Shown piece by piece: positions 7,838-52,498 of a stretch of 64,000 nucleotides of DNA (position 1 is the first letter of the stretch; each line of letters begins with the position of its first letter). The stretch comes from Antechinus flavipes (taxonomy: Eukaryota). The notes beneath the pieces were generated by a model. That model was given only the letters and a program-made list of their open reading frames with translations. It did no database searches and had not been told where the DNA came from. The position numbers and the translations under genes were made by a program. The stretch is taken from NCBI RefSeq assembly GCF_016432865.1, contig NC_067400.1:624030001-624094000 (forward strand), read 5' to 3'.

Positions 7838-7870
<33 letters not shown>

Positions 7871-22820: not shown

Positions 22821-24900
<2,080 letters not shown>

Positions 24901-24949
24901 TCACCTCTGCATCTCGGCCGTCCTGGGGGCTCCCGCCCAGCTCTCTGCG

Positions 24950-25122
24950 CCTTCCCCCTCCCTCGGGACCACACCAGGCGCCCCTGCCTCCGGGAGTCCC
25001 GTTACAGGCCCCCTCCCGCCCGGCTCTCAGAGCCTTCCCTCTCCCTCGGGACCACACCAGGCGCCCCTGCCTCCGGGAGGCCGGTGTCCCCTGTTCCAGG
25101 CCCCCTCCCGCCCGGCTCTCAG
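24950..25122. repeat. Imperfect ~85-95 bp direct tandem duplication upstream of the FAM83E ATG
   Basis: CCCTCGGGACCACACCAGGCGCCCCTGCCTCCGGGAG...CAGGCCCCCTCCCGCCCGGCTCTCAGA occurs twice. Confidence 0.85.
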
Positions 25123-26175
25123 ACTGTCCCCACGCCTCCGGCCAGCGGCTAAACAGTCACCCTTCCCTGGACAGGCAGCGACCCTTCACTGCGCCCCCCG
25201 AGAGGAGCCTCGGCCCCTGTGGGGTGGGGGATGGGGCTCCAGAGCACAAGGTCCAAAATCCCTGCCTGGGAGAGAGGGAAGCAGTTGTGAGCCCAGCCAC
25301 TGGTCGGTTCCCAGAGCTCCCCTAAGACCCAGAGGCCCCAAGGGGGATAGGGCCCCCAAACCCTTCATAGACACGGGCCCAGCTCCGAGACCCCTGCCCC
25401 ATTTCATGCAGCAGCCATCCTGGGGACAACCGGGAAGGAAACCCCAGAACCCCACCCTCCGGACCCAGGAACCGCTCCGGAGAAGCTTGCCCTCCTGCCA
25501 GTCTCTTCAGTGCCCCAACCAAGCAGTGTTTCCTTCTTCCCCAGCCCTTCTCATCCTGCCCTGCCCCCCATCCTCACCAAGAGCTCAGGACCCCCTGCCC
25601 AGGCCCCCTCACTTCTCCCTCAAGATCCCATCCCTCCCCCCAGCTCAACCCCGGAGATTCCCTACTTGCTTATGGCGAGAGGGGCAGCCAAGAGCCCCCC
25701 ATAATTCGGGCCCCTCGCCGGGCACACCTCACCAGCTCCTCATTCATTCTAGGACTGGCCCAGCCAGGGGAAGGATCAGACTAATGGGGACCCAACCCTG
25801 AATGTAAACAACAGGGCCTGGCCTTGGGGAAAGCAGGAGGCCCCCTGGCACCTGGAGGGGCAGTGGCTCAGTGCTCACCTGCCTGACAGCCAGATCCCCC
25901 GCCGCCCACTGGGGCCACGCCTCAAGATCACCCCCTTGCCCACCCCCTCGGGCCCTTTGTAAAAAGTAGAAGCCACAGATGGAGAAGGGGCAGGTGCCCT
26001 CAATGCTGAGGGTGGGGCCGGCACTGGGAGGAAGGGGAGGACACCTGGGTCCCTGGAGGTAGGCCATGGCATCCTCAGGCCTTCAGCCAAGTAGTGCTGG
26101 GTGGCCACCTGTCACCCTCCCCCTCCCCCCCAAGTCAGCAGACACAGGCAAAGAGAAATGTGTGGTCCAAAAATC

Positions 26176-26181
26176 TTTAAT
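26176..26181 (-). terminator. RPL18 polyadenylation signal ATTAAA
   Basis: Plus-strand TTTAAT about 20 nt after the stop codon. Confidence 0.8.
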
Positions 26182-26200
26182 ATAACAAGGAGTAAGGAAG

Positions 26201-27930
<1,730 letters not shown>

Positions 27931-27960
27931 GCTGGCGCCCTCCCGAACACCAGCCCAAAC

Positions 27961-28260
27961 AGGAAAGACCGACGAGCCGCGAAGCACGCTGGGAAGGCCA
28001 GCGGAGAGGTCGGCGCGCCTGACGTCGCGACGGGATGGGCGGGCACGTCGCGCGCGACACCGCCTCTCTGGCGCGCACGGCCTCCTCTCTATGGTCGCCC
28101 CTCTATTCGCACGACGAGGGGAGGGGCCGGTGGGTGGCGCAGGGCGGGCGGCGGCGCTCTTGCCTCGTCGGCGTCTCGGTGGTCAGGCACAGCTGGCCTC
28201 AGTGTACGCGGAGCGTACAGACCCTCCCCGGCCCAGGGTGCGGCCCCGCCCTGCCAGCTG
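27961..28260 (-). promoter_or_regulatory. RPL18 TCT/5'TOP core promoter and CpG island
   Basis: Minus-strand TCTTTCC at 27968-27962 matches YC+1TYTYY. CRE-like TGACGTCG at 28020 and palindrome GTCGCGCGCGAC at 28047-28058. Confidence 0.75.
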
Positions 28261-28380
28261 TGTAACCGCAGGCCCGGACCCCCCTCCCCATGCCCGGTCT
28301 GAGCCTGACCCCCCGTGCCACCCCCGGCCCGGCCAAAGTGGTCAGACCGGCCTGGCCAGGCTAGGGGGTGTGGCAGGGTG

Positions 28381-28990
28381 AGGGACGGAGAAAGAGAGAG
28401 ACAGACTCTGGGAAAAACAGATTGTGGGTGAGGGAGCACAGGGGGGCTGTGAGGGAGAGACCGCGGGACGGAGAAAGGGGAGAAGGAGCTCCGGAGAGAC
28501 ACGGGGACAGGGAGAGACGCTGAGGGCGCGTAGAGAAGGGGTTGTGGGGGAGGCAGAGGCCAAAGGGAGCGAGGGAGAGACAGACTGGGAAGGCAGACAC
28601 CAAGGGGAGAAGGTGAGGCAGAGAGACAGAGACTAGGAGAAGACGGGCGGGTGTGAGGGGGAGCCAGACAGAAAAGGGGGCGGGGAGAGACACTAATGGC
28701 GCATCTAAGGCAGGGACACTGAGGCAGAATCAAGAGACACAGAGAAACCGAGGCAAAGCCCGAGAGGCAGGAGGAGGTGAGGAACAGAGCCGGGTGGGGG
28801 AGGCAGCAAGGCGGGGGCTGCTTAAGATCGGCCCGAGATCCAGGCAGGAAGAGAGAGCTTGAAGCAGAAACAAGAGCAGAGAGCCTAAGGACAAAGACAG
28901 AGACCACGAGAGGGCAATAGAGGCAGAGGCTGAGACAGAAGGAAAGAGAGAAACAACAGCAGCAAAGGGCCAGAAACAGAAACAAGCCGA
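28381..28990 (+). repeat. GA-rich low-complexity tract
   Basis: GAGACAGAGA-type purine runs on the plus strand. Confidence 0.75.
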
Positions 28991-29859
28991 GTTCAGCCTC
29001 CTCCTGCCCTCAGAGCCCATCTCGCTGTCAGGGCCCGGACCCTCCATTCCCGCCCTGCATCTCCACAAGCTGAGCCTGAGAGCAAGTGTCCAGAGAGAAA
29101 CAGCCAGCCCCCTGCTGCCCCTAGGCCCAGGTCTGAGGAAATGCTGGCTGAGCGGGAAGGGTGGCTGGGGAGGTTTCTCTTCTGCCCTCTTGGAGAGTAG
29201 CTAAAGTGACTCCGTCTCTCCAGGGTCTGACCCCTCGACCCCCTTTTGTCGCTCTCCGTCAACATGGTTATTTTTCTCTCTGAGGTTCTTATGGTCACGT
29301 CCGACTCTCCATGACCCCGGTTGGGGGTTCCTTGACAAAGATACTGGAAAGATTTCCCCTTTCCTTCTATGACTCATTTTACGGATTTAGAAACCGAGGC
29401 AAACAGGCTGAAGCTCACAGCCAAAATCGCACAGTCGGGGTCTAAGGCCATGTGCTTGTGCACCATGGCGCCATCTAGCCGTGGATAGAGTCCCGTAATA
29501 CTCCCGGCCCCCCTGCCGTGTGACCTTAGGCTGGTCCTTTCCTCTGAGCTGTGACTCCTGGCGGGGGATTGTTCGGCCGCCTTGGTGCGCTGTGGGTAGG
29601 GAGGAGCCAGGGACCCGTCTGCTTCTTTATGTTCTTGCAATACTCAGCCCTGCACCGGTGCCGCCGCTGCGCCCAAAGGCGGTTTCCCTGCCCTGGGCTC
29701 CCCGGGAATGTGAGCCCCCCCCCCCCCCAGGGCTCCCCCGCCCGCTTTCGGCCACACCGCCCTTCTCGGCTGCCTGTGGGCGGCCTCTGTTTCCCTGACT
29801 CAGCGTCTGTCACTCTCAGGCTCTCGGGCTCTCTCCTCTCTCTCTGTCTCCTGTTCTGC

Positions 29860-29990
29860 TGAGACAAATGGGATTAGGTGACTGGCCCAGGGTCACACAC
29901 GTACAAGTTTTCAGTGTCTGAGATCAGATTTGAACTCAGCTCCTCCTGACTTTAGGGCTGGTGCTCTTTCCACTGCGCCACCCAGCGGCC
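29860..29990 (-). mobile_element. WSINE1/MAR1-like SINE abutting the left edge of the tandem array
   Basis: Reverse complement GGGCCGCTGGGTGGCGCAGTGGAAAGAGCACC...GAGTTCAAATC; its 5' end is about 10 bp from the first monomer. Confidence 0.85.
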
Positions 29991-29999
29991 CATAGGGTC

Positions 30000-32900
30000 T
30001 TTCAGGCTTTTATTCTCTCAGGGTCCCTGTTTCAGGCTTTTAGTCTCTCAGGGTCCCTGTTTCATGGTCTCTGTTTTAGACTTTCAGTCTCTCAGGGTCT
30101 CTTTTTTCAGGCTTTTAGTCTCTCAGGGTCCCTATTTCAGGCTTTTATTCTCTCAGGGTCCCTGTTTCAGGCTTTTATTCTCTCAGGATCCCTGTTATAG
30201 GGTTTTATTCTCTCAGGGTCCCTGTTTCAGGCTTTTAGTCTCTCAGGGTCCCTGTTTCAGGCTTTTAGTTTCTCAGGGTCCCGGTTTCAGGGTCTCTGTT
30301 TTAGACTTTCAGCCTCTCAGGGTCTCTTTTTCAGGCTTTTAGTCTCTCAGGGTCCCTATTTCAGGCTTTTATTCTCTCAGGGTCCCTGTTTCAGGCTTTT
30401 AGTTTCTCAGGGTCCCTGTTTCATGGTCTCTGTTTTAGACTTTCAGCCTCTCAGGGTCTCTTTTTCAGGCTTTTATTCTCTCAGGGTCCCTGTTTCAGGC
30501 TTTTAGTCTCTCAGGGTCCCTGTTGCAGGCTTTTAGTCTCTCAGGGTCCCTGTTGCAGGCTTTTAGTGTCTCAGGGTCCCTGTTTCATGGTCTCTGTTTT
30601 AGACTTTCAGTCTCTCATGGTCTCTTTTTCAGGCTTTTAGTCTCTCAGGGTCTCTTTTTTCAGGCTTTTAGTCTCTCAGGGTCCTGTTTCAGGGTCTTTG
30701 TTTTAGACTTTCAGCCTCTCAGGGTCTCTTTTTCAGGCTTTTAGTCTCTCAGGGTCCCTATTTCAGGCTTTTATTCTCTCAGGGTCCCTGTTTCAGGCTT
30801 TTAGTTTCTCAGGGTCCCTGTTTCATGGTCTCTGTTTTAGACTTTCAGCCTCTCAGGGTCTCTTTTTCAGGCTTTTATTCTCTCAGGGTCCCTGTTTCAG
30901 GCTTTTAGTCTCTCAGGGTCCCTGTTTCAGGCTTTTAGTCTCTCAGGGTCCCTGTTTCAGGCTTTTAGTGTCTCAGGGTCCCTGTTTCATGGTCTCTGTT
31001 TTAGACTTTCAGTCTCTCATGGTCTCTTTTTCAGGCTTTTAGTCTCTCAGGGTCTCTTTTTTCAGGCTTTTAGTCTCTCAGGGTCCCTGTTTCAGGGTCT
31101 TTGTTTTAGACTTTCAGCCTCTCAGGGTCTCTTTTTCAGGCTTTTAGTCTCTCAGGGTCCCTATTTCAGGCTTTTATTCTCTCAGGGTCCCTGTTTCAGG
31201 CTTTTAGTTTCTCAGGGTCCCTGTTTCATGGTCTCTGTTTTAGACTTTCAGCCTCTCAGGGTCTCTTTTTCAGGCTTTTAGTCTCTCAGGGTCCCTATTT
31301 CAGGCTTTTATTCTCTCAGGGTCCCTGTTTCAGGCTTTTAGTTTCTCAGGGTCCCTGTTTCATGGTCTTTGTTTTAGACTTTCAGCCTCTCAGGGTCTCT
31401 TTTTCAGGCTTTTAGTCTCTCAGGGTCCCTATTTCAGGCTTTTATTCTCTCAGGGTCCCTGTTTCAGGCTTTTAGTTTCTCAGGGTCCCTGTTTCATGGT
31501 CTCTGTTTTAGACTTTCAGCCTCTCAGGGTCTCTTTTTCAGGCTTTTATTCTCTCAGGGTCCCTGTTTCAGGCTTTTAGTCTCTCAGGGTCCCTGTTTCA
31601 GGCTTTTAGTCTCTCAGGGTCCCTGTTATAGGGTTTTAGTTTCTCAGGGTCCCTGTTTCAGGGTCTTTGTTTTAGACTTTCAGTCTCTCAGAGTCTCTTT
31701 TTCAGGCTTTTAGTCTCTCAGGGTCTCTTTTTCAGGCTTTTATTCTCTCAGGGTCCCTGTTATAGGGTTTTATTCTCTCAGGGTCCCTGTTATAGGGTTT
31801 TAGTCTCTCAGGGTCCCTGTTTCAGGCTTTTATTCTCTCAGGGTCCCTGTTTCAGGCTTTTAATTTCTCAGGGTCCCTGTTTCAGGGTCTCTGTTTTAGA
31901 CTTTCAGCCTCTCAGGGTCTCTTTTTCAGGCTTTTAGTCTCTCAGGGTCCCTATTTCAGGCTTTTATTCTCTCAGGGTCCCTGTTTCAGGCTTTTATTCT
32001 CTCAGGATCCCTGTTATAGGGTTTTATTCTCTCAGGGTCCCTGTTTCAGGCTTTTAGTCTCTCAGGGTCCCTGTTTCAGGCTTTTAGTTTCTCAGGGTCC
32101 CGGTTTCAGGGTCTCTGTTTTAGACTTTCAGCCTCTCAGGGTCTCTTTTTCAGGCTTTTAGTCTCTCAGGGTCCCTGTTTCAGGGTCTCTGTTTTAGACT
32201 TTCAGCCTCTCAGGGTCTCTTTTTCAGGCTTTTAGTCTCTCAGGGTCCCTATTTCAGGCTTTTATTCTCTCAGGGTCCCTGTTTCAGGCTTTTAGTTTCT
32301 CAGGGTCCCTGTTTCATGGTCTCTGTTTTAGACTTTCAGCCTCTCAGGGTCTCTTTTTCAGGCTTTTAGTCTCTCAGGGTCCCTATTTCAGGCTTTTATT
32401 CTCTCAGGGTCCCTGTTTCAGGCTTTTAGTCTCTCAGGGTCCCTGTTTCAGGCTTTTAGTCTCTCAGGGTCCCTGTTATAGGGTTTTAGTTTCTCAGGGT
32501 CCCTGTTTCAGGGTCTTTGTTTTAGACTTTCAGTCTCTCAGAGTCTCTTTTTCAGGCTTTTAGTCTCTCAGGGTCTCTTTTTCAGGCTTTTATTCTCTCA
32601 GGGTCCCTGTTATAGGGTTTTATTCTCTCAGGGTCCCTGTTATAGGGTTTTATTCTCTCAGGGTCCCTGTTATAGGGTTTTAGTCTCTCAGGGTCCCTGT
32701 TTCAGGCTTTTAATTTCTCAGGGTCCCTGTTTCAGGGTCTCTGTTTTAGACTTTCAGCCTCTCAGGGTCTCTTTTTCAGGCTTTTAGTCTCTCAGGGTCC
32801 CTATTTCAGGGTTTTATTCTCTCAGGGTCCCTGTTTCAGGCTTTTAGTGTCTCAGGGTCCCTGTTTCATGGTCTCTGTTTTAGACTTTCAGTCTCTCATG

Positions 32901-35430
32901 GTCTCTTTTTCAGGCTTTTAGTCTCTCAGGGTCTCTTTTTCAGGCTTTTAGTCTCTCAGGGTCCCTGTTTCAGGGTCTCTGTTTTAGACTTTTAGTCTCT
33001 CAGGGTCCCTATTTCAGGCTTTTAGTCTCTCAGGGTCCCTATTTCAGGCTTTTATTCTCTCAGGGTCCCTGTTTCAGGCTTTTAGTTTCTCAGGGTCCCT
33101 GTTTCATGGTCTCTGTTTTAGACTTTCAGCCTCTCAGGGTCTCTTTTTCAGGCTTTTAGTCTCTCAGGGTCCCTATTTCAGGCTTTTATTCTCTCAGGGT
33201 CCCTGTTTCAGGCTTTTAATCTCTCAGGGTCCCTGTTTCAGGCTTTTAGTCTCTCAGGGTCCCTGTTATAGGGTTTTAGTTTCTCAGGGTCCCTGTTTCA
33301 GGGTCTTTGTTTTAGACTTTCAGTCTCTCAGAGTCTCTTTTTCAGGCTTTTAGTCTCTCAGGGTCTCTTTTTCAGGCTTTTATTCTCTCAGGGTCCCTGT
33401 TATAGGGTTTTATTCTCTCAGGGTCCCTGTTATAGGGTTTTATTCTCTCAGGGTCCCTGTTATAGGGTTTTAGTCTCTCAGGGTCCCTGTTTCAGGCTTT
33501 TAGTCTCTCAGGGTCCCTGTTTCAGGCTTTTAATTTCTCAGGGTCCCTGTTTCAGGGTCTCTGTTTTAGACTTTCAGCCTCTCAGGGTCTCTTTTTCAGG
33601 CTTTTAGTCTCTCAGGGTCCCTATTTCAGGGTTTTATTCTCTCAGGGTCCCTGTTTCAGGCTTTTAGTGTCTCAGGGTCCCTGTTTCATGGTCTCTGTTT
33701 TAGACTTTCAGTCTCTCATGGTCTCTTTTTCAGGCTTTTAGTCTCTCAGGGTCCCTGTTTCAGGGTCTCTGTTTTAGACTTTCAGCCTCTCAGGGTCTCT
33801 TTTTCAGGCTTTTAGTCTCTCAGGGTCCCTATTTCAGGCTTTTATTCTCTCAGGGTCCCTGTTATAGGGTTTTAGTCTCTCAGGGTCCCTGTTTCAGGCT
33901 TTTATTCTCTCAGGGTCCCTGTTATAGGGTTTTAGTCTCTCAGGGTCCCTGTTTCAGGCTTTTATTCTCTCAGGGTCCCTGTTATAGGGTTTTAGTCTCT
34001 CAGGGTCCCTGTTTCAGGCTTTTAGTTTCTCAGGGTCCCTGTTTCAGGGTCTCTGTTTTAGACTTTCAGCCTCTCAGGGTCTCTTTTTCAGGCTTTTAGT
34101 CTCTCAGGGTCCCTATTTCAGGCTTTTATTCTCTCAGGGTCCCTGTTATAGGGTTTTAGTTTCTCAGGGTCCCTGTTTCAGGCTTTTATTCTCTCAGGGT
34201 CCCTGTTATAGGGTTTTAGTCTCTCAGGGTCCCTGTTTCAGGCTTTTAGTTTCTCAGGGTCCCTGTTTCAGGGTCTTTGTTTTAGACTTTCAGTCTCTCA
34301 GAGTCTCTTTTTCAGGCTTTTAGTCTCTCAGGGTCTCTTTTTCAGGCTTTTAGTCTCTCAGGGTCCCTGTTTGAGGCTTTCAGTCTCTCAGGGTCTCTTT
34401 TTCAGGCTTTTAGTCTCTCAGGGTCCCTGTTTCAAGCTTTTAGTCTCTCAGGGTCCCTGTCTCAGGGTCTCTGTTTTAGACTTTCAGTCTCTCAGGGTCT
34501 CTTTTTCAGGCTTTTAGTCTCTCAGGGTCCCTGTTTCAGGCTTTTAGTGTCTCAGGGTCCCTGTTTCAGGCTTTTATTATCTCAGGGTCCCTGTTATAGG
34601 GTTTTAGTCTCTCAAGGTCCCTGTTTCAGGCTTTTAGTCTCTCAGGGTCCCTGTTTCAGGCTTTTAGTTTCTCAGGGTCCCTGTTTCAGGGTCTCTGTTT
34701 TAGACTTTCAGTCTCTCAGAGTCTCTTTTTCAGGCTTTTAGTCTCTCAGGGTCTCTTTTTCAGGCTTTTATTCTCTCAGGGTCTCTGTTTTAGACTTTCA
34801 GTCTCTCAGGGTCTCTTTTTCAGGCTTTTAGTCTCTCAGGGTCCCTGTTATAGGGTTTTAGTCCTCAGGGTCCCTGTTATAGGCTTTTAGTCTCTCAGGG
34901 TCCCTGTTTCAGGCTTTTATTATCTCAGGGTCCCTGTTATAGGGTTTTAGTCTCTCAAGGTCCCTGTTTCAGGCTTTTAGTCTCTCAGGGTCCCTGTTTC
35001 AGGCTTTTAGTTTCTCAGGGTCCCTGTTTCAGGGTCTCTGTTTTAGACTTTCAGTCTCTCATGGTCTCTTTTTCAGGCTTTTAGTCTCTCAGGGTCTCTT
35101 TTTCAGGCTTTTATTCTCTCAGGGTCCCTGTTATAGGGTTTTATTCTCTCAGGGTCCCTGTTATAGGGTTTTATTCTCTCAGGGTCCCTGTTTCAGGCTT
35201 TTATTCTCTCAGGGTCCCTGTTATAGGGTTTTAGTCTCTCAGGGTCCCTGTTTCAGGCTTTTATTCTCTCAGGGTCCCTGTTTCAGGCTTTTATTGTCTC
35301 AGGGTCCCTGTTGCAGGCTTTTATTGTCTCAGGGTCCCTGTTGCAGGCTTTTATTCTCTCAGGGTCCCTGTTTCAGGCTTTTAGTCTCTCAGGGTCCCTG
35401 TTATAGAGTTTTAGTCTCTCAGGGTCCCTG
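30000..35430. repeat. Large 30-bp minisatellite/satellite array with higher-order structure (about 165-170 monomers plus about 30 14-bp half-units)
   Basis: Consensus TTTCAGGCTTTTAGTCTCTCAGGGTCCCTG. Variants include ..TTTTATTCTC.., TTATAGGGTTTT.. and TTTTAGACTTTCAGCCTCTCAGGGTCTCTT; half-unit TTTCA(G/T)GGTCTCTG. Counts are hand estimates. Confidence 0.99.
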
Positions 35431-35600
35431 TTTCAGGGTCTCTGTTTCAGGATCTCTGGTCTGTTTCAGGGTCTCTGTCTGTTTCAGGATCTCTGGTCTG
35501 TTTCAGGGTCTCTGTCTGTTTCAGAATCTCTGGTCTGTTTCAGGGTCTCTGTCTGTTTCACGGTCTCTGGTCTGTTTCAGGGTCTCTGGTCTGTTTCAGA
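35431..35600. repeat. 18/19-bp repeat tail of the array
   Basis: TTTCAGGATCTCTGGTCTG alternating with TTTCAGGGTCTCTGTCTG. Confidence 0.92.
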
Positions 35601-35869
35601 CTTCCAGGCGCTCTGCAGCTGCCTGAATTGCTTTTCTAGCTTGACTTTCTACATCTATCTGCTCCTGCCTCTGGGTCTCTTTCTTGCTCGGTGTCTCTGA
35701 ATCTTCCTGACGGTGCTCTCCATCTTGTTTTGTTTGTCTCGGCCTCTCTGTGTTTGTCCTGCGGCATCACTCACAGACCTTTGGATCTGAAGAGATCTCT
35801 GCAGCTGAATCTCTCTCTGCGTGTCTGTGTGTCTGTCACCCTACAGGCCGGCCTCTCCTGGGGTAGGGC

Positions 35870-36175
35870 CAGCCGTTCAGGAGAAAGGCGCCTGCGCGGG
35901 CACCGCCCATAGCAAAAATGGCGGCTACAGCTCGCAACCTCCAGTTATGGCGCTGCTTCTCGCGAGAGTCGCACAACCTTCTGCCGGTCAGGCCGGCCGG
36001 AGCCCCGCCCTCTCCGCGATCTTAATGGTTCATCTAAGCCAGGCCTATACTTCAATTGGCTTAAATTCCACACACCTTCCTCCCACCCCTTACCCTCCCC
36101 ACAGTCCTCAGGACCGAAGCGGGAAGGCCGGGCCGGGAGGGGGCGGGACTTCCGGGTGTGAGAGGAGGCGGGGTC
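35870..36175. promoter_or_regulatory. CpG-island housekeeping-type promoter, probably for SPHK2
   Basis: YY1 AAAATGGCGGC at 35915-35925, palindrome TCTCGCGAGA (BANP/ZBTB33-associated) at 35958-35967, ATTGG near 36055, GC box, and ETS ACTTCCGG at 36148-36155. Confidence 0.75.
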
Positions 36176-36189
36176 AGAGATACTGACAC

Positions 36190-36555
36190 TGAGCAGAGAT
36201 TGAGGGGGAGACGGAGCTTGAGAGACACGGAGACTACGAGAGACTCAGAGACTGAGAATGATGCTCAGACTAAAGAGACTGTTATAGAGACGCAGAGATT
36301 GGGAGACACAGAGAGACAGAGATTGATGAGACTTGGAGAGACAATAACGAGACAGAGACTTGGAGAGACAATAGACTGGGGGAGAGAGAGACTTGGATGG
36401 ACAACTTAGGGACGGGGGAGACAGACTCGGAGAGACAATAACTTAGAGACGGCGCGAACACTGGGGGAGACAGACTTTGGGAGAAAATAACTTAGAGACT
36501 GGGGGAGGCAGAGACTTGGAGAGACAATAACTTGGAGACTGGGGGAGACAGAGAC
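36190..36555 (+). repeat. Degenerate purine-rich minisatellite
   Basis: Recurring GAGACTTGGAGAGACAATAAC(TT)AGAGACTGGGGGAGACA. Confidence 0.8.
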
Positions 36556-37508
36556 CACTCAACTTGGGCTGGGTGTCAGGGAGAGGAGATGAGACACTGA
36601 GGGCGCCCGAGACCACTATGACGGGGGAGGAGCCGGGACGGAGCTAGAGCCTTCGGGAGCCTTGACCCGGGCTGGCCCTTGGGGAGCCCGCGGGGATGGG
36701 GGCCTGACGCTGGAGCTGCCGGATCCAGGAGGGTGAGAGGCCTCTGGGCCTGCCAGGCAGAGGGCGTGGCGGGGGCTGGGAAAGGAGGAGCAAAGGTCAG
36801 GTCTGGGGCTGGGTGGGGCGGGGGCGGGCCGCGGGTGGGTGTCCCAGCCAGAGCAGGACCTTGGCCAGAGACATTCGGGGCACCCAGGTCAGTGCTGCCC
36901 CAGCCCACTCCCTGGGGCCTTCCTGCTGCAGTCCCTGAGCGCTGGCCAGACCCAGCTGCTTCTCTGGCACTCTCCAGCTCGCCCGGCTCTCCGGCTGGCC
37001 CTCGGCCCTTGGGTGTCAAAGTCCTCTGGCTCCTTGTCCCTGTGTTGTCCTGCCCATCACTGGGCTCTCTGGGTTCTAGTTTCTGTCTTTCTCTCTTGCC
37101 ATCCTCATGCTGGGCCGTGGGGATGGGGGGGTTGGGGGGGCCTCCTGACCCTGTTCTCTCCTCATGTCTGGCTCTGAGAGGCTTTTCAGTACCCCCCTCC
37201 CCTTGGGTCTCTCTCCTTGGCCTTGGGGTGGGGGCAGAGGCCCTTTGGCCTTGACTTCTTCGTGGGGGCCTTGGGGGCAAGGAGCTCGAGAGATGGGGTC
37301 ACAACAGGGTGGGCCCCAAAGGAGCGCAGGCCTTCAGAGGCTGCTGCCTGGTGCGGGTGTGCGGGAAGGGCCAGACCCTCCAGGTCTTCCCCCAGCCTGG
37401 CCCTAACCTCCCTCCCTCTGTCCCTGCAGATCCTGGCCTTTGGGAAGAGCTGAGCTGACCTCGCCCTGATCCCCAGGCAGCCCAGGCCAGGTGGGGCTGG
37501 GTGGGGCC

Positions 37509-40500
37509 ATGGCAGGCACCCCACTCCTGCATGGGGAGTTTGGCTCCTATCCGGCCCGAGGCCCCCGCTTTGCGCTGACACTCACCCCAGTGGCCTTGCA
37601 TGTGCAGCGGCTGCGCCCCAGACCGGAGGCCTGGCCCCAGGGGGGCCTGGTCCCTCTGGCTGAGGTCTCCGGTTGCCGGACCTTGCGCAGCTGCTCCCCT
37701 AACGACTCTGCTGCTTACCTGTGTGTCTACACTTATCCCCGGGGCCGGCGGGGGGGCCGCCGGCGGGCAGCTCGGACCTTCCGGGCTGACCGGGCCCCCG
37801 ACTACAAGGAGAATCACGCAGAAGCCCAGCGCTGGGCCACTGCTCTCACCTGCCTACTTCGAGGGGTGCCCTTGCCTGGGGACCTTGGTGAGCTGCAGGG
37901 CCAGGGTGGGCACAGGCCACCCGGGGGGAGGGAGTCCAGAAGGAACATGGGGGCTCCAGGTGGATGAGCGGGACCTGGGTTCACAGGGGAACGGAGTGAG
38001 AGGTCAGGGCCTGAGGAGATGGATGCTGGGGGCAGGCCTAGAGCCCCTGGAAGGGGGGGTGCCCATGAGTGGGGGACATGGAAGGGCCGAGAGCCTGCCG
38101 CAGGGAGGGGGGCAAAGATGGGGGTGACCCGAGCAGAGGAGTCCGGAGCCCCCGGTGGAAGGGCCCCCAGGAGGGAGAGGCCGAAGCCTGAGGAGCCCAG
38201 GAAGAAACACACCAGAGGGGCTGTTGGCTTGCTGCGCGCTCCACCTGGGGCCTGTCTGTGTCTGCCTCTCCCGGAGGGTCTATCCCCCTCTCTGTGTGTG
38301 TCTCTCTCCCTCTCGGTGTCTCTGTCTCTGTGTCTCTCCCAGACACACACACACAGACACAGCTGACTCTGCAGCTCTTTGTGTTTCTGCATTTCTGAGG
38401 GCAGACACCCAGGAGCCCCAAGAGGGTGGGCCCCAAACCCCATCCGTGGGGCTGGAACAGAGGCCTTTTGGCCCTAGGAGTCTCTGTCCCCCCCACTTCC
38501 AAGGCTGGCTTCTTTACACTCCCCCAGCCCTCCTCTGGGTGCCTGCCCCCCACCCTCATGGGGGGGATGGCTACAGGGGTGGGGAGCGATCCTGTGGCCT
38601 GGGAGGACTCCCTCTCAGTCTTTCTGTCTCCCCACCTGCCTCCCAGGGCTCTCTTTCTGTCTGGGTGATTGAACACCTGGGGATTAGGTGGGTGGGTCGC
38701 TGTAAGCCAAGAACAATTAGCTCCCCTTTCTCTGCCCACAACACCCCCACGTCTGGGCCGGGCGCCAGGACACCTGGGTCCAAAGAACGGAGGCGATGAA
38801 ATATCAGCCCTCCCCATTGTTCCCCGTTGGGGTGGGTGGTGTGGGAGATGCTGGGGCCTGGGAGGGGAGGGGGTAGGGGGGAAGGGAAGAGGATGCCAGG
38901 GCCTGCCTCAGAGAGAAGGGTCACGTGGGCGCCTGGGGGTCTCCAGAGGGTGGGCAGGGAGAACCTGGAACCACAACTCCCAGCGGGCCTGGGCTCGCCG
39001 GGCTCCCTGCCGGAGGGAGCTGGGCCCCGAAGCCTTCTGGGAGTTGTAGTGTCTCGCTTCCAGGACGGTTGACACCTTTTGTTGTCCCTTTGCGCCAGAG
39101 ATCACACCGGAGCTCTTGCCCCGGCCCCCGCGGCTGCTCCTATTGGTCAATCCCTTTGGGGGGCGGGGCCTGGCCTGGCAATGGTGTAAGAACCACGTGC
39201 TGCCTATGATTTCCGAAGCGGGCCTTTCCTTCAACCTCATCCAGACGGGTGAGCTCGGGTCTGGTGGGGGTGGGGGTGCCGGGGACCTCGAGGCGGGGCG
39301 AAGGGCGGCTGGCTGGGGCCCGTCCCCCTCTCACGCGTCCGGGCGCTCCTCTCCCCAGAGCGGCAGAACCACGCCCGGGAGCTGGTGCAGGGGCTGCGCC
39401 TGAACGAGTGGGACGGGATCGTCACCGTCTCCGGGGACGGCCTCCTGTACGAGGTGAGTTGGGACCGGGGCCCCTGCGGCCGAGCTGGGGGCCCGGGCAG
39501 CCCCCCCCTCAGCCTCCCGGGGCCCGGGAAGCCCCCCCTCAGCCTCCCGGGGCCCGGGCAGCCCCCCCCCCCTCAGCCTCCCGGGGCCCGGGCAGCCGTC
39601 CCCCCCCCCCCCCCCCCCCCCCCCGCCCGCCTCTTGGGGCACCCACGCAGCCTCCGTCTGCCCACAGGTGGTGAACGGGCTCCTGGACCGGCCAGACTGG
39701 GAGGAAGCCGTGAAGATCCCGGTGGGAGTCCTGCCCTGCGGCTCCGGCAACGCTCTGGCTGGAGCCATCAATCAGCATGGGGGGTAGGCAGGGGGCCTCC
39801 CCTTGGGCTCCTCCCTCCCGGCCCGTGGGTCAGGATGTCTCGGCAGCTCCGCCCCTTCCCTCCCTCTCCGGCAGGTTCGAGCCCGCCATCGGCCTAGATC
39901 TGCTGCTCAACTGCTCCCTGCTCATGTGCCGCGGGGGCGGCTCCCCGCTGGACCTGCTCTCGGTCACCCTGGCCTCCGGAGCCCGCTGCTTCTCCCTCCT
40001 CTCCGTGGCCTGGGGTTTCGTGTCCGACGTGGACATTCAGAGCGAGCGCTTCCGGGTCCTGGGCCCGGCCCGGTTCACCCTAGGCACGGTGCTTCGGCTG
40101 GCTTCCCTCCACGTCTACCCGGGCCGTCTCTCCTACCTCCCGGCCTCCCCCCCGGCCTCCAACGGCCCCCCGGCTGCACCCCAGCCCCTTCCCCGCGCTG
40201 CCTCCGAGCTGGCCCTGGCCCCGGCCCCGGCTTCGGCCCCTTCGCCAGAAACACACTCCCCCTTGCACCGCTCTGTGTCAGACCTGCCTCTGGCCCGAGG
40301 GCCGGACTTCCCCCGTGGGCCCCAGGAAGACCCCTCGCCCTCCCCGCCCCCTTCCCCAGGGCCCTGCCTCCTGTCCCCTGACCCGCCCCTCCCCCCTGGG
40401 CCTCCCTCCCTGGGCCACAGCCCCCCGGGCTCTCCGGCCTCTCAGACAGGGGCCTCCTGTGGGCTCCCTCCCTCAGAAGGGCCTCGGGAACCCCCGGCCC

Positions 40501-41075
40501 CCATGAAGGCCCCGGCGTCCCCCGACACACAGACTTCCCCGGATCCCGCGGCTTCTCCCGATTCGGAGTCCCCTGCCCCCGGGACCCTCCACGGCCCCAA
40601 GGATGACCTGTTGCCCCCCCTTGGCTCCCCGCTGCCCCCAGGCTGGGTGACCCTGGAGGGTGACTTTGTGTTGATCCTGGCGCAGTCCCCGAGCCACCTG
40701 TGCGCTGACCTGGTGGCGGTCCCCAATGCCCGGTTTGGGGACGGGCTGGTGCACTTGTGCTGGGTTCGAGGAGGGGTTTCCAGGGCCTCCCTGCTGCGAC
40801 TCTTTCTGGCCATGGAGAAGGGGGGCCACTTTGGCCTGGGCTGTCCCCAGCTAGGCTACGCTACCGCTCGAGCCTTCCGCCTGGAGCCGCTCACGCGCCA
40901 CGGCATCCTCACAGTGGACGGGGAACAGGTGGAGTACGGGCCTCTCCAGGCCCAGATTCACCCCGGCCTGGGGACCCTGCTCACAGGTCCCGAGGCCCCG
41001 GGATCCCAGCTGGCCGGGGGGGAGGCCTGGGGGCCCAAGTGTGGCCCGGTCCCCTGGGGAGGGGGCAAAGTCTAG
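37509..41075 (+). CDS. SPHK2: Sphingosine kinase 2, 5 coding exons, 646 aa
   Basis: Exons 37509-37887, 39099-39248, 39359-39453, 39668-39783, 39875-41075; total 1941 nt. Motifs LLVNPFGG, SGDGLLYEV, LPCGSGNAL, SDVDIQSE and VDGEQV; basic NLS RGRRGGRRR. The acceptor of the first coding exon is at 37430. Confidence 0.96.
39494..39600. repeat. ~33-bp C-rich minisatellite in an SPHK2 intron, followed by a poly-C run
   Basis: GGGCAGCCCCCCCCTCAGCCTCCCGGGGCCC repeated 3-4 times. Confidence 0.85.
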
Positions 41076-41569
41076 CCTGAGCCTGGCTGGCAGGAAGTCT
41101 AAGCGGGCCCGGGCCTGCTTGTTGGGGGGAGGCCGGCCAGCCTGAGCCAGCAGGTCCACGGCTTCCCTGTCCGGGCCCAGGCCCGGGGGGGAGGGGTGGC
41201 CTCTGCTGGAGGACGGAGCGCTGCCCCGCGGCCACTGGCCCGTTCCTCTCACCTCAGGGGACGAGGCTGGTCACCCAGAGCCAGCCTCCACACAGGGACC
41301 AGGCTGGAGATAGGGTCTCCAGGACCTCCTGAGGGCAGAGCCTCCCCCTCCTCAGCCCCATGATGGGACCCAGAATGTGGGGGGCACCGACGGCAGACTG
41401 CCTTCCTTGGGCCCCCAGACGGGGGTGCCCCTTCTGCCTCCTTTGCTCCTGGTGAGCATCCCCCCCCCCGTTCTTTTGCACTAGGACCTCCTCCCTGAGG
41501 AGTGGGGCAGACCCCTGCCCCAGTTTCCCTCCTCTACCCCAGTGGTCTTCAAGGCTACAGCCTCTATGC

Positions 41570-41575
41570 AATAAA
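41570..41575 (+). terminator. SPHK2 polyadenylation signal AATAAA
   Basis: First AATAAA after the stop, about 500 nt downstream. Confidence 0.75.
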
Positions 41576-41722
41576 CAGTAACTACGCTTGCTTCAGCCCT
41601 TTGGCCCTTCCTACGTCGGGGGGAGGGGGGATCACTTTACAGATGGGGGGGAGCTGGGGAAAGGGCCTGCCCGGGTCCCGAGGTTCCAGCCCCCCATGCA
41701 GCAGATGCTCAGCTTCTCATGG

Positions 41723-41728
41723 TTTATT
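41723..41728 (-). terminator. DBP polyadenylation signal AATAAA
   Basis: Plus-strand TTTATT about 550 nt after the DBP stop. Confidence 0.75.
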
Positions 41729-42281
41729 GGAGTTATTCAGTTGGAGAGGGCCAGGGAGCAAAGGAATGGGAAGGGGGGCCCCCCCAACTCCCGCATCCTC
41801 CCCCCACTCATCTCAGAGGAGGAGGAGGGGTCTGTACTTTTTTCTTAAAAAATATATATATATATATAGATAGATTTATCATCATCTCAGCACCGTGCCC
41901 TACTGATCCCTGGGCCTTAGCCCCTCGAGGAGCCCAGACGGCCCATCCCCGGCCATACTAGTGGGCAGGCAGGGGGCAGAGTTCAAGGGAGAGTAATGGG
42001 GCTGCCGCGGGACGCTTCCCCGGGGCTGGCCCCTCAGTCCTGGCCAGGGAGGAAGGGGTGTCTTGCAGCCCGGGGAGGGGGCCAAGTCTGCCCAGGGCCA
42101 CAGTGTTCCTGGGAAGAGCCTGCTGGTCCCAGTGTGCCAAGAACTTGGGGTTGTGGGGCCCAGGGCCTCCCCAAAGGAGAATGTTCTGGGGTGGAGGTGG
42201 GAGCCGGCAACCAGTGGGGACCAGGAGGCAGTGTCCGGAAACGGGGAGGCCGGGGTGGGGCCTGGGGGCGCTGGGGAGGCG

Positions 42282-45035
42282 TCACAGGGCCCCGTGCTGG
42301 GCCTGGTAGCGCGACAGCACGGCGCGGTAGTGGGAGAGCTCCTGGCGAACGGCGACCACCTCCTGTCTGAGCAGGGCGTTCTCCTTCTCCAGGAAGGCCG
42401 CCCGCACCGAGATCTGGTTCTCCTTCAGCCGCCGCGCGTCCCGCGAGCGCTTGGCCGCCTCGTTGTTCTTGTAGCGCCGGCTCCAGTACTTCTCGTCCTG
42501 GGGGGGCGGGCAGGCGGGGTTGGGGGTGCGGACGAGGCCGGCCCTCCGGGCGGCCCGCAGCCCAAAGCTTGGGGAGACTCGGCTGGCGGCCGACCAGCCA
42601 GAAGGGCAGCGGCGCTCCGCCAGGGCTGCCCTCGTGGGGCAAAGGAACCGGGGCTCGGGGAGGGGAAGGGCTGGCCCGACACCAGGTGGCCCCCAAAGCC
42701 CCTCACCCCCTGGGGTACAGCGAGGCTGGTCCCCCAAAGCAGGCTCACCTTCTGCTCCTCTGGCACCTGAATCTTCCGAGCCTTCTTCATGATGGGCTGC
42801 GGCTTCAGCTCCTCCTCAGAGAAGCGGTGCTTCCGGGGGTCAAAGGTGTCCTGGCCTGGGACGCTGGACAGGGCCAGGTCGGCCGGGTCGGGGTCAAAAG
42901 TCATCAGCACCTCCACCGACTCCGGGTCCACCGGGCTGGGGGTGTCCCGGGAGGCCGGGCCTGAACAAGAGTGAGGAGGGGCACAGTGAGCAATGCGGGG
43001 TCCCCGAAGCTCCCGGCTTGGGCTGCTCTGAGGGGCCTGACTCTGGGGTCACCGTGTCCATTCCCTGTCTCCTCCTTCCCCCACACCGAACAGAACTTGG
43101 GCAGTGAGGGGGCGAGGGAAGTCCTTCCGGCAGTCTCGCCAGCAGCGCTCCTGCTGCTTCCCCAGACCCGTCCTAGGGGCCTGGGAGAGAGAACAGAAAG
43201 GACGGGACCCAGAGGGCCTCCCCACTAGGAAGAGCAAGGCGCATGCGCACACCCTTCCCCTCCGCCTGCCGGGGCCAGCCGAGGACAAGGCTGCTGGGGA
43301 GGGGGGGGGGGGTGAGGGGAGGAGTCACGTGTCTAGGCATCCTCCGCTCCCGCCCCCGCCGCACGTGACCGCGCGCCGCTCGGGGCTGCCTGCCCTGGGG
43401 AATGGGGAGGGGCTCACGTGGGCCCTGAGTGTGAGGCTGCGGCCCCGGGCGGGGCCTGGCCAGGGAGGACACAGAAGACTTGCCGGGCCGAGGTACTCCA
43501 GTTCCCGGCAGGCCCCGCGGCAGAAACTCGGGCGAAGAGCGAGCGGCCTATCTTAAGGGCTGCTGGGAGCTGTAGTTCAAACATCGCCTGGCCCAGACCT
43601 CACTGGAGGGGCTGGCGGATGGGCCGCCCCCTCGGGGATCTTGCCCTCCCCCCCCCCCCCCCGGGGCCCCGTATCTCCCCTCTCCTTTCCCTCGCCCTGG
43701 CGCACCTGCGCGCTGGGAGCCCGAGCCACCTGCGCCTAGGGCCCTGGGGCCCAATACGTGTCCCCCCGAGGTCAGCCGTGGAGAGGCCGGCGTGGGCGTT
43801 GGCACTGGGGAGGAAGAGCTGGACGGGGCCGGGGACGAGGAGCCCGAGGAACAGGACGGGGCGGCGGCGTTAGGGGCAGGGGCTGCGCGGGGCGGCGGCG
43901 GCCCAGGGTCCGGAGGGCTGGGCGGCAGCCCGTGCTCCAGCAGAAAGGCGTCCAGGTCTACGTCGTCCACGTCGCCGAAGGGCAGGGGCCGCTCCCACAG
44001 CAGGGAGGCCAGCAGAGCTCCGGGACCCGGGCCCGAGCGGGGCCGGCCCGAGACCCCTAAAAGGCCGCCCACTTCCTCGCTGCCGCCGGCCGCCGCCTTG
44101 CGCTCCTTGTCCTTTAGGAGACCTAGCGAAGAGACGGGGCGGACGGGGGAAGGGGGGTAAAGGAGGGGAAAGAAGGGGGCGGGGCGCAGAGCGGCACAGG
44201 GACAGCAAGTCACACGCAGACGGGGCACAGGGGCAGCGAGTCACGGACACGCGCAAAGTGGGACAGACGCAGAGAGGGACAGTGAGATGCAGAGCGAGAC
44301 GCGCAGAACGAGGCGGAGGGGGGAGGGAGTACAACGATTACACAAACGCAGGGGGTGCAGAGGCCGGACAGCGCCCCGGAAATGGGGAGTCAGGAAAGGA
44401 CCGAGGGAAAGCCCCGGGGGGCGATCCATGGGGCATCCAGCCCGAAACAGGGGCGCAGGCAGAGGAGTAAGATGGCACAGAGGGACCGGGCAGGAGAGGC
44501 AGTTGAGGATCCGTGCGGGGACACAGCAGCAGCTCGGAGAGGGAGCGGGACGCGCACGGAGGGCCACCGAGAGGCAGAGGCGCGGGGCAGGGGACGACAC
44601 GGGAGGGGGACACGCAGGGAAGAGCAAGGGCAGGGTCAGCGACTTCTGACCTAGACTCCCCTGAGCCCTTCGCACCCATCCCCAAGGCCCGGGCTTTCCT
44701 CTTTGCGCCCCCCGAAGGGGCACGAACCGGCGGGCAGGGCCAGGAGAGGGCTCCGCCCCGTCTTGGGCCCGCGGCCCCATGTGACCCCGGGAAGCCCCGC
44801 CCCGGCCCGTGTCCGAGCCTTGTGAGCTCCCGACCCCCGCCCGCCCATAGCCGCTGGGGTCCCGGGGGAGAAGGGGACGCCTGGGTCCCGCCGCGGGACA
44901 CTCACAACTGGCCGGCGGCTCCTTGGTCTTCCCGGGCCCCTGCAGGAGGCTTCGCAGGCCGTGCAGCGCCGCGCCTCCCGCCGGGCCGCCCAGCAGCTGT
45001 GGGGCCGGGGACCTGTCGCTCGAGGGCCTCGCCAT
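42282..45035 (-). CDS. DBP: D-box binding PAR bZIP transcription factor, 4 exons, 324 aa
   Basis: Exons 45035-44906, 44122-43706, 42960-42749, 42497-42282; total 975 nt. PAR region [17 protein letters not shown] and b[32 protein letters not shown]. Confidence 0.97.
43239..43576. promoter_or_regulatory. DBP intron 2 enhancer: three CACGTG E-boxes, an NRF1 palindrome and a ZNF143-type motif
   Basis: CACGTG at 43326, 43362 and 43415; GCGCATGCGC at 43239-43248; TGCTGGGAGCTGTAGT at 43561-43576. Confidence 0.8.
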
Positions 45036-45239
45036 CCCCCGGGGGCTGGGGGCCGTCACCGGCTCATGGGCGACGAGGCTGCACCTTTGGAGACTTCGGG
45101 CTAGCAGTTGCCGCGGTGCCCCGGGGCAGAGACCCTTGCCAACCCCGGCTCGCTTATGCGTAGGAGCCAGGCGTCCGTGGCAGCTCGCAGACCCCCGGGT
45201 GGGCCGGGCGAGCGCCTGTCTGCAAGGGGCTCTGGCGAG

Positions 45240-45980: not shown

Positions 45981-46060
45981 TCTGCCGTTCCCCATATACC
46001 CCTTTTCCCCAAGCCCTCGGACCCCAGCTTCTCCAACTACACAAGAACGTGTTCTGCTTC

Positions 46061-46066
46061 TTTAAT
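46061..46066 (-). terminator. CA11 polyadenylation signal ATTAAA
   Basis: Plus-strand TTTAAT about 53 nt after the CA11 stop. Confidence 0.7.
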
Positions 46067-46118
46067 AGATTTAGCTTTTGCGGGTGGGGGGGGGGGGGAA
46101 GGCAAGCAGGTCCTCTTC

Positions 46119-51941
<5,823 letters not shown>

Positions 51942-52409: not shown

Positions 52410-52440
52410 CTCAAATTCTCCTCTCTCTCTCTCTCTCTCC

Positions 52441-52498
<58 letters not shown>

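What the first reader, a model, noticed from the sequence alone, without database searches (positions are those of the whole stretch)
30000..35600. 5.6-kb satellite with nested higher-order repeats embedded in a gene-dense housekeeping cluster
Seen: a 30-bp monomer that is itself a diverged dimer (TTTCAGGCTTTTAGTC + TCTCAGGGTCCCTG). A 134-bp cassette (14-bp half-unit plus 4 monomers) recurs with half-units at 31224, 31358 and 31492. A 402-bp block is duplicated (markers 30419/30821 and 30583/30985). Super-units of about 790-850 bp share a rare CAGAGT variant at 31689, 32539 and 33329. Hierarchy like this is typical of satellite DNA, yet it sits between RPL18 and SPHK2, and I know of no such array at the human locus. 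Inference: a young, actively turning-over, lineage-specific VNTR that may be length-polymorphic.
Basis: partly seen in the sequence, partly recalled or inferred. Interest (0 to 1): 0.85.

Follow-up and report, generated by a model that had tools for sequence, protein, structure and literature searches.

The report
Dasyurid minisatellite between RPL18 and SPHK2
A real 5.6-kb non-coding tandem repeat lies between the RPL18 and SPHK2 promoters of the yellow-footed antechinus; it grew in place from a roughly 110-bp seed, exists in shorter form in the Tasmanian devil, and looks like an ordinary but well-documented expanding minisatellite.

Summary
Window 30000-35437 holds about 168 head-to-tail copies of a 30-bp unit, followed by 8.5 copies of a 19-bp unit (35441-35599). 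There is significant higher-order structure: 134-bp cassettes, a 402-bp duplication at 99.3% identity, and exact 224-254-bp blocks recurring 790-850 bp apart.

The window is Antechinus flavipes. The array is intergenic. It starts 2.0 kb upstream of the RPL18 start site and ends about 240 bp upstream of a strongly conserved SPHK2 promoter block.

It is not private to Antechinus. The Tasmanian devil has an orthologous array of about 44 copies with its own variants and a 150-bp higher-order unit. The fat-tailed dunnart has only about 110 bp of 13-19-bp TTTCAGG motifs at the same spot. Four non-dasyurid marsupials have an RPL18-SPHK2 spacing of 3.9-4.2 kb, which equals the Antechinus spacing minus the array.

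The best reading is a locus-specific minisatellite born from a 16+14-bp dimer, amplified and homogenised by unequal exchange, and probably neutral. The Antechinus battery of minus-strand AATAAA signals is absent from the devil array, which argues against a conserved function.

Length polymorphism and genome-wide uniqueness could not be tested. Other first-stage notes of this scan cover the same stretch. Interest is modest.

The parts
27928..27967 (-). RPL18 exon 1: pyrimidine-tract (TOP-like) start CTTTCCT at about 27967, ATG at 27930-27928, then donor GTAAGT. Further RPL18 coding exons lie at 26398-27580 on the minus strand.
   Evidence: Sequence read on the minus strand. Stop-free translations carry RPL18 peptides such as [29 protein letters not shown] and [36 protein letters not shown]. 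Orthologous loci show a Ribosomal_L18 gene at this position.
27500..28250 (.). CpG island over the RPL18 promoter and exon 1.
   Evidence: GC 0.63-0.75 and CpG observed/expected 0.86-1.09 in 250-bp bins.
28187..29011 (+). Degenerate purine-rich (GAGAGACAG-type) low-complexity stretch. Its size differs between species: about 0.8 kb here, about 0.1 kb in the devil, and a 1.8-kb array in the dunnart.
   Evidence: GC skew +0.40 and AT skew +0.70. Weak repeat families. Gap in the devil alignment. TRF on L001 4989-6793.
29860..29993 (+). MIR/MAR1-type marsupial SINE copy directly 5' of the array. It is present at the same place in all three dasyurids and is not the source of the monomer.
   Evidence: Alignment A1. 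Two more copies in the window, at 763 and 7740, have unrelated 3' flanks. The family name is from memory and was not tested.
30000..35437 (+). The 30-bp minisatellite: about 168 copies, consensus TTTCAGGCTTTTAGTCTCTCAGGGTCCCTG, 28 units carrying an extra 14-bp half-unit, 67% pyrimidine on the + strand, only 2 CpG.
30419..31222 (+). Two tandem copies of a 402-bp, 12-unit block, 399/402 identical.
31224..31625 (+). Three successive 134-bp cassettes (14-bp half-unit plus four monomers), 96-99% identical.
31553..34296 (+). Three super-units of 790-850 bp, each beginning with the unit-variant run BBOPMFH or BOPMFHHG. They share exact 224-254-bp blocks and are 87-90% identical over 780 bp.
34297..35437 (+). 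3' domain with a roughly 418-bp partial duplication (CAGAGT at 34299 and 34717) and runs of the TTATAGGG and TTTTATT monomer variants.
35441..35599 (+). 19-bp (37-bp dimer) repeat TCTGTTTCAGGGTCTCTGG, 8.5 copies. It is conserved in size in the devil (7.6 copies) and corresponds to the ancestral seed type.
35840..36210 (+). Strongly conserved promoter-like block, read as the SPHK2 core promoter. It carries GC boxes, AAAATGGCGGC, TCTCGCGAGA, two ATTGG boxes and ACTTCCGG.
   Evidence: Near-invariant across Antechinus, Sarcophilus and Sminthopsis in alignment A3. CpG observed/expected 0.6-0.74. The motif names are from my own knowledge.
36501..36732 (+). SPHK2 non-coding exon 1 (minimum extent), donor GT at 36733. 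Its 5' part runs into purine-rich repeats at 36200-36560.
   Evidence: The spliced mRNA contig L003 of a related dasyurid aligns at 36501-36748 and then jumps to 37429. Sequence.
37430..37887 (+). SPHK2 exon 2 with the start codon at 37509-37511.
   Evidence: 100% identity to Antechinus flavipes SPHK2.

Best explanation
This is a locus-specific, non-coding minisatellite (VNTR-type array with higher-order repeats) in the intergenic spacer between the divergently transcribed RPL18 and SPHK2 genes of Antechinus flavipes.

Shown: it sits at a site that in the dunnart holds only about 110 bp of 13-19-bp TTTCAGG motifs next to an old SINE. A 30-bp unit made of a 16-bp plus a 14-bp motif is amplified at that same site in both Antechinus (about 168 copies) and the Tasmanian devil (about 44 copies). 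The two arrays carry species-private variants and different higher-order units. Within Antechinus, multi-monomer blocks (134, 402 and about 800 bp) are themselves duplicated at 99-100% identity.

Inferred: the array grew and is kept homogeneous by out-of-register exchange (unequal sister-chromatid or homologue recombination, replication slippage, gene conversion). This copies blocks of several monomers at a time and so produces the nested periodicities. It most likely has no sequence-specific function. Its main effect is to push the RPL18 and SPHK2 promoters, already 3-4 kb apart in marsupials, a further 5.6 kb apart.
For: The array and its hierarchy are established. The species is set (100% match to A. 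flavipes SPHK2). One search shows that the spliced SPHK2 mRNA of a related dasyurid has exon 1 at 36501-36732, downstream of the array. One search shows a conserved promoter block at 35840-36210.

Orthology of both flanks to the devil and the dunnart is shown. The devil array lies at L002 6678-7969 (30 bp, 43.7 copies, 150-bp and 102-bp higher-order periods), followed by the 19-bp repeat at 7957-8099. The dunnart has only short 16-19-bp repeats at L001 8223-8321.

Concerted evolution: an Antechinus monomer's nearest neighbour is 0.10 mismatches away in its own array and 1.75 in the devil array. For devil monomers the values are 0.77 and 2.95. Only the consensus 30-mer is shared.

The RPL18-ATG to SPHK2-ATG distance is 9579 bp here and 3979 bp without the array. 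It is 3.9-4.2 kb in opossum, Gracilinanus, brushtail possum and sugar glider.

It is non-coding: only short low-complexity ORFs, with the frame broken by the 44-bp units. No Rfam family matches. The neighbourhood is rich in small minisatellites.
Against: No population or second-individual data exist, so length polymorphism, a usual hallmark of a VNTR, is untested. The monomer could not be searched genome-wide, so other arrays of the same family cannot be excluded. The dunnart state could be a secondary collapse rather than the ancestral seed, because no non-dasyurid DNA for this spacer could be fetched. Neutrality is inferred, not shown. The array abuts a conserved promoter and has a strongly strand-asymmetric motif content: 46 AATAAA on the minus strand and none on the plus strand, and 122 TTTCAGG on the plus strand. 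The assembly is PacBio CLR polished with short reads, so the exact copy number and the few differences between copies are uncertain.
Confidence: 0.8

Rival explanations
1. The array is a functional directional spacer. Its minus strand is a battery of poly(A) signals that terminates upstream-antisense transcription leaving the SPHK2 promoter before it reaches RPL18. Alternatively or in addition, its plus strand, a chain of pyrimidine tracts followed by CAG/G, soaks up splicing or CU-binding proteins on transcripts that leave the RPL18 promoter in the antisense direction.
For: There are 46 AATAAA and 4 ATTAAA on the minus strand and none on the plus strand. There are 122 TTTCAGG on the plus strand. 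No strong donor (GTRAGT) occurs on either strand. The array ends about 240 bp from the conserved SPHK2 promoter block.
Against: The AATAAA comes from one monomer variant (G to T, giving TTTTATT; 28% of Antechinus monomers). That variant is absent from the devil's orthologous array, which has 0 TTTATT. The dunnart has no array at all, yet has the same conserved promoter. The feature is therefore not conserved. The motif asymmetry follows automatically from amplifying one 30-mer. No transcription data are available.
Confidence: 0.07
2. The array lies inside a 5'-UTR intron of SPHK2. This would hold if an alternative first exon sits next to the RPL18 promoter, so that the array is transcribed on the plus strand as part of the SPHK2 pre-mRNA rather than being intergenic.
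For: NCBI lists two transcripts for each A. flavipes SPHK2 protein isoform (two accession numbers each), so alternative 5' ends are possible. The RPL18 CpG island extends to about 28250 on the SPHK2 side.
Against: The only transcript evidence available, dasyurid mRNA contig L003, starts in exon 1 at or upstream of 36501, downstream of the array, with no splice from further upstream. A separate, highly conserved promoter block lies just upstream of that exon.
Confidence: 0.1
3. The array is one locus of a dispersed, possibly already catalogued, satellite family, or the internal tandem-repeat region of a transposable element, rather than something born at this locus.
For: It directly follows a SINE. 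The genome could not be searched, and the scan's own index has no look-alike.
Against: No copy exists outside 30000-35600 in the 64-kb window. In the fetched loci, matches to the monomer and the half-unit fall only within the orthologous repeat region. Other copies of the SINE have unrelated 3' flanks. The dunnart shows a short seed at exactly this site with both unique flanks continuous, which is what in-place birth predicts. No paper in the library contains the monomer.
Confidence: 0.08
4. The array is an assembly artefact: its length or internal order was produced by mis-assembly or over-polishing of a shorter repeat.
For: The assembly is from noisy PacBio CLR reads polished with 100-bp short reads, which can misplace variants inside repeats. 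An N gap lies at 16442-16631 in the same window.
Against: 5.6 kb is well within the length typical of PacBio continuous long reads (my own knowledge; the paper's passages read give no read length), at about 100x coverage and a contig N50 of 51.8 Mb. No gap touches the array. An independent assembly of another genus has an array of the same unit at the same place. The variant pattern is richly structured rather than a collapsed consensus.
Confidence: 0.05

Closest known systems
Mammalian minisatellites / VNTRs, including hypervariable and 'large' VNTR loci in gene-rich, GC-rich, distal chromosome regions
   Same: The unit is 30 bp in head-to-tail orientation, and the array is kilobases long at a single euchromatic locus. 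Copy number changes rapidly between related species (168 against 44 against none). Variant repeats are interspersed. Growth by out-of-register exchange is inferred. The neighbourhood is full of smaller minisatellites.
   Different: Polymorphism within the species is not shown. The array is AT-richer (45% GC) than its 60-70% GC surroundings. It lacks the classical G-rich core and chi-like motifs. The higher-order structure is unusually clear.
Higher-order-repeat satellites (primate alpha satellite and similar)
   Same: Monomer variants are arranged in multi-monomer units that are themselves tandemly repeated, with higher identity between units than between adjacent monomers. There is concerted evolution within species.
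   Different: This is a 5.6-kb single locus between two housekeeping genes, not a megabase heterochromatic or centromeric block present on several chromosomes. The monomer is 30 bp rather than about 170 bp. The higher-order units are irregular (134, 164, 402 and 790-850 bp) and present in only 2-3 copies each.
Tandem arrays born from short seeds next to interspersed repeats (minisatellite genesis by duplication of a dimeric motif)
   Same: The short seed state is preserved in one species, the expanded state in others, and an old SINE lies at the boundary.
   Different: The monomer is not derived from the SINE itself. Many described cases arise from a transposable element's own sequence.

Membership tests
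Minisatellite / VNTR | Tandem head-to-tail repeats of a unit of roughly 10-100 bp | tested here: met
   Period 30, 168 copies, all on one strand.
Minisatellite / VNTR | Single defined locus with unique flanks, array 0.1-20 kb | tested here: met
   Unique flanks are orthologous in three species. The array is 5.6 kb. No other copy exists in the window or the fetched loci. The whole genome was not searchable.
Minisatellite / VNTR | Copy number variable among individuals of the species | not testable with these tools
   Only one assembly of the species was available. Between genera the number differs four-fold.
Minisatellite / VNTR | Classical G-rich core (GGGCAGGANG) or chi-like motif of the Jeffreys hypervariable class | tested here: not met
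   0 matches on either strand. This excludes that subclass only, not the general class.
Higher-order-repeat satellite DNA | Multi-monomer units repeated with higher identity than neighbouring monomers | tested here: met
   Higher-order copies are 99.3-100% identical, against about 81% at lag 30. Shuffle test.
Higher-order-repeat satellite DNA | Large (100 kb to Mb) blocks, usually heterochromatic or centromeric and at several loci | tested here: not met
   The array is 5.6 kb between two expressed housekeeping genes. Other loci were not searchable.
Macrosatellite (kb-sized units such as D4Z4) | A regular unit of 1 kb or more, repeated many times | tested here: not met
   The super-units are 790-850 bp, about three copies, only 87-90% identical overall and irregular.
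Protein-coding tandem repeat (mucin-like exon) | A long open frame kept across the repeat | tested here: not met
   The longest stop-free run is 165 codons on + and 39 on -. The 44-bp units shift the frame. ORFs reach at most 110 aa and are low-complexity.

The most novel reading that the evidence does not exclude
The array has been co-opted in Antechinus as a one-directional transcription stop and insulator between two divergent housekeeping promoters. Its 46 minus-strand AATAAA signals, densest near SPHK2, would end SPHK2 upstream-antisense transcripts before they interfere with RPL18. On this reading, copy-number variation would tune SPHK2 or RPL18 output in a lineage-specific way.
Probability: 0.05. 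Interest if true: 0.55.

Novelty: new member of a known kind. Interest (0 to 1): 0.3.

Why it matters
On its own this is an ordinary kind of sequence, an expanding minisatellite. Its value is as a clean worked example. Three related genomes preserve the seed (dunnart), an intermediate array (devil) and a large nested higher-order array (antechinus) at one orthologous site with unique flanks. The birth of a 30-bp unit from a 16+14-bp dimer, the onset of higher-order structure and concerted evolution can therefore all be read directly. It is also a practical marker candidate for antechinus population studies if it proves length-polymorphic. For annotation, it corrects the picture of the locus. 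The array is intergenic. It did not create the separation of the RPL18 and SPHK2 promoters, because SPHK2 has its own conserved promoter in species without the array. It only more than doubled that separation.

Tried and rejected
1. Monomer derived from the adjacent SINE: rejected. Two other SINE copies in the window end at the same point and are followed by unrelated sequence.

2. Array related, in inverted orientation, to the purine-rich GAGAGAC repeats on either side (28187-29011 and 36190-36570): rejected. Local alignment scores of 22 and 24 lie within about 1-2 SD of dinucleotide shuffles (means about 19, maxima 25-30).

3. Coding repeat: rejected.

4. Known RNA family in 24000-42000: none found.

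5. CTCF-like, PRDM9-like, chi and Jeffreys-core motifs: none in the array.

6. Divergence gradient from the edges to the centre of the array: none. Mean mismatches to the consensus are 2.0-2.9 in every 500-bp bin.

7. DNA of the spacer from non-dasyurid marsupials (opossum, Gracilinanus, brushtail possum, sugar glider): gene tables only, no DNA returned. Only the spacing could be used.

8. A. flavipes isoform X2 and an Arctic fox SPHK2 look-up: not on record.

9. Literature search for the monomer strings: no paper. A general search for marsupial minisatellites with higher-order repeats found nothing on this locus.

10. The scan's own index, searched by sequence: blank.
Full report

Yes. Tandem Repeats Finder reports one array at window 30000-35437 (period 30, 168.2 copies, 77% matches, score 4649; the same span also scores with periods 134 and 164). 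A second array follows directly at 35441-35599 (period 19, or 37 as a dimer, 8.5 copies).

Base composition changes sharply at both borders. GC falls to 0.44-0.47 from 0.56-0.75 outside, and AT skew is about -0.58. Autocorrelation peaks at lag 30 (0.81), then at 134, 164, 60 and 194.

CAGAGT also occurs at 34299 and 34717.

Cutting the array at the CTCAG anchor gives 166 units: 129 of 30 bp and 28 of 44 bp, the latter being a monomer plus a 14-bp half-unit. I gave each distinct unit variant a letter. The resulting string shows:
- the cassette ACDI (134 bp) many times;
- the 12-unit blocks ACDIFBZaKLQb and ACDIFBBNKLQc (402 bp each) side by side;
- longer units that start BBOPMFH or BOPMFHHG.

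The 402-bp copies are 399/402 identical, and the 134-bp cassettes 96-99% identical. Exact 224-254-bp blocks recur 790, 820 and 850 bp apart. Another exact 224-bp block occurs at 30122 and 31941.

The order is far from random. The longest repeated run is 8 unit variants, against a mean of 2.7 and a maximum of 5 in 2000 shuffles. Fifty-two positions lie in repeated 4-unit words, against a shuffle mean of 0.08. The consensus 30-mer with up to 3 mismatches hits 119 times, all within 30000-35400, with 0 expected by chance.

**2. Where is it?**

The large SPHK2 exon in the window is 100% identical to sphingosine kinase 2 of Antechinus flavipes. The published assembly is PacBio at 100x with Hi-C. Its scaffold N50 of 636,717,922 bp equals the length of the contig that carries this protein (PMC9290055).

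RPL18 lies on the minus strand. Its peptides are readable in stop-free translations of 26398-27580. Exon 1 starts with a pyrimidine tract (CTTTCCT) at about 27967 and has the ATG at 27930-27928.

SPHK2 lies on the plus strand, with its ATG at 37509.

A spliced SPHK2 mRNA contig from a related dasyurid (L003, a Logan assembly of run SRR33390036, 96% protein identity) aligns to the window in exon-sized pieces. Its 5'-UTR exon maps to 36501-36732, with a GT donor at 36733, and then joins 37430.

Just upstream, 35840-36210 is almost invariant among Antechinus, Sarcophilus and Sminthopsis. It is packed with motifs typical of TATA-less housekeeping promoters: GC boxes, AAAATGGCGGC, TCTCGCGAGA, ATTGG and ACTTCCGG. 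The alignment is; the motif names are from my own knowledge.

The array is therefore intergenic. It starts 2033 bp upstream of the RPL18 start. It ends 241 bp upstream of the conserved SPHK2 promoter block and 902 bp upstream of the known 5' end of exon 1. An alternative SPHK2 first exon near RPL18 cannot be excluded, and I keep that as a rival.

**3. Comparison with other species**

The orthologous spacers of the Tasmanian devil (L002) and the fat-tailed dunnart (L001) were fetched through their SPHK2 proteins. Both flanks of the array align to both species.

| Species | State of the orthologous site |
|---|---|
| Antechinus flavipes (window) | 30-bp array, about 168 copies, plus 19-bp repeat of 8.5 copies |
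| Tasmanian devil (L002) | 30-bp array at 6678-7969, 43.7 copies, higher-order periods 150 and 102 bp, 44-bp units also present; then the same 19-bp repeat, 7.6 copies, at 7957-8099 |
| Fat-tailed dunnart (L001) | About 110 bp between the SINE and the unique right flank: six or so TTTCAGG-initiated motifs of 13-19 bp, the first two (16+14 bp) matching the two halves of the 30-mer |

The same 16+14 proto-unit is still the first unit of the devil array.

The SINE 5' of the array is present in all three species. Other copies of that SINE in the window are followed by unrelated sequence, so it is a neighbour and not the source.

RPL18-ATG to SPHK2-ATG distance:

| Species | Distance |
|---|---|
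| Opossum (Monodelphis) | 3.9 kb |
| Gracilinanus | 4.1 kb |
| Brushtail possum | 4.1 kb |
| Sugar glider | 4.2 kb |
| Tasmanian devil | 4.25 kb |
| Dunnart | 5.6 kb (includes a 1.8-kb purine-rich array) |
| Antechinus | 9.58 kb; 3.98 kb without the array |
| Platypus | 6.5 kb, no such array |

DNA of the non-dasyurid marsupial spacers could not be fetched.

**4. Turnover**

Monomers resemble their own species' monomers much more than the other species'. For Antechinus, the nearest neighbour is 0.10 mismatches away in its own array and 1.75 in the devil array. For the devil the values are 0.77 and 2.95. Of 32 and 27 distinct 30-mers, only the consensus is shared.

Private variants:
- Antechinus: TTATAGGG and TTTTATT.
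- Devil: CTTTAG, GTGTTTCAGG and CAGTCTCC.

The newest Antechinus duplications differ by 0-0.75%, while the orthologous flanks differ from the devil by 11-17%. If rates are equal and there is no conversion, these duplications fall in roughly the last twentieth of the time since the two lineages split. This is an inference. Short-read polishing may also have blurred differences between copies.

There is no gradient of divergence along the array.

**5. What it is and how it works**

The best explanation is a single-locus minisatellite. It arose in place from a dimeric seed before the Antechinus-devil split. It then expanded and was homogenised independently in each lineage by out-of-register exchange of blocks of several monomers. 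That process accounts for the 134, 164 and 402-bp and the roughly 800-bp layers.

It is non-coding and matches no Rfam family. It lacks CTCF-like, PRDM9-like, chi and classical minisatellite-core motifs. It has only 2 CpG in 5.4 kb.

I rate it as most likely neutral. Its main consequence is to more than double the distance between two promoters that were already separate.

**6. Functional readings raised by other first-stage notes on this stretch**

The minus strand carries 46 AATAAA and the plus strand none. The plus strand carries 122 TTTCAGG. These counts are real, but they follow from amplifying one 30-mer.

The AATAAA-creating variant is absent from the devil array, and the dunnart has no array at all. 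So there is no conservation to suggest selection. No transcription data were available.

**7. Things that did not hold**

- A relation between the array and the purine-rich repeats on either side, in inverted orientation, is no stronger than composition alone gives.
- No paper in the library contains the monomer.
- The scan's own index has no look-alike.

**8. Verdict**

What holds: the array is lineage-restricted and actively turning over.

What needs correcting: it is shared with the devil lineage, so it is neither species-specific nor recently born. It is better called a minisatellite with higher-order repeats than a satellite.

It is a new member of a known kind, of modest interest. Its main value is as a clear three-stage example of minisatellite birth and as a possible population marker.

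Noticed in passing
window 28187-29011; L001 4989-6793; L002 about 5597-5705: A second, purine-rich (GAGAGACAGGG-type) repeat region in the same RPL18-SPHK2 spacer changes size independently between species. It is about 0.8 kb and degenerate in Antechinus and about 0.1 kb in the devil. In the dunnart it is a 1.8-kb array with its own 116, 169 and 200-bp higher-order periods. Each lineage has expanded a different array in this spacer.
   Followed up: partly
window 36200-36560: The non-coding first exon of SPHK2 runs through a purine-rich tandem repeat (GAGACTTGGAGAGACAATAAC-type units of 16-40 bp). The 5' end of the related dasyurid mRNA contig lies inside it, so the 5'-UTR length may vary with this repeat.
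   Followed up: partly
window 35840-36210: A roughly 370-bp block is almost invariant among three dasyurids and carries a dense set of housekeeping-promoter motifs. SPHK2 therefore has its own promoter, separate from the RPL18 CpG island at 27500-28250, also in the species without the array.
   Followed up: partly
window 16442-16631, with 16173-16435 beside it: A 190-base N run (assembly gap or masked) lies next to an AAG-rich microsatellite.
   Followed up: no
window 1639-25123 and 39488-52774: There are many small GC-rich minisatellites (units of 28-83 bp, 2-7 copies) across the window. One lies inside SPHK2 sequence (39488-597), in a proline-rich stop-free reading. The region as a whole is prone to tandem repeats.
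   Followed up: no
L002 3623-5753: The devil assembly's called RPL18 product is 318 residues instead of 188. This is probably an annotation over-extension into the upstream region.
   Followed up: no
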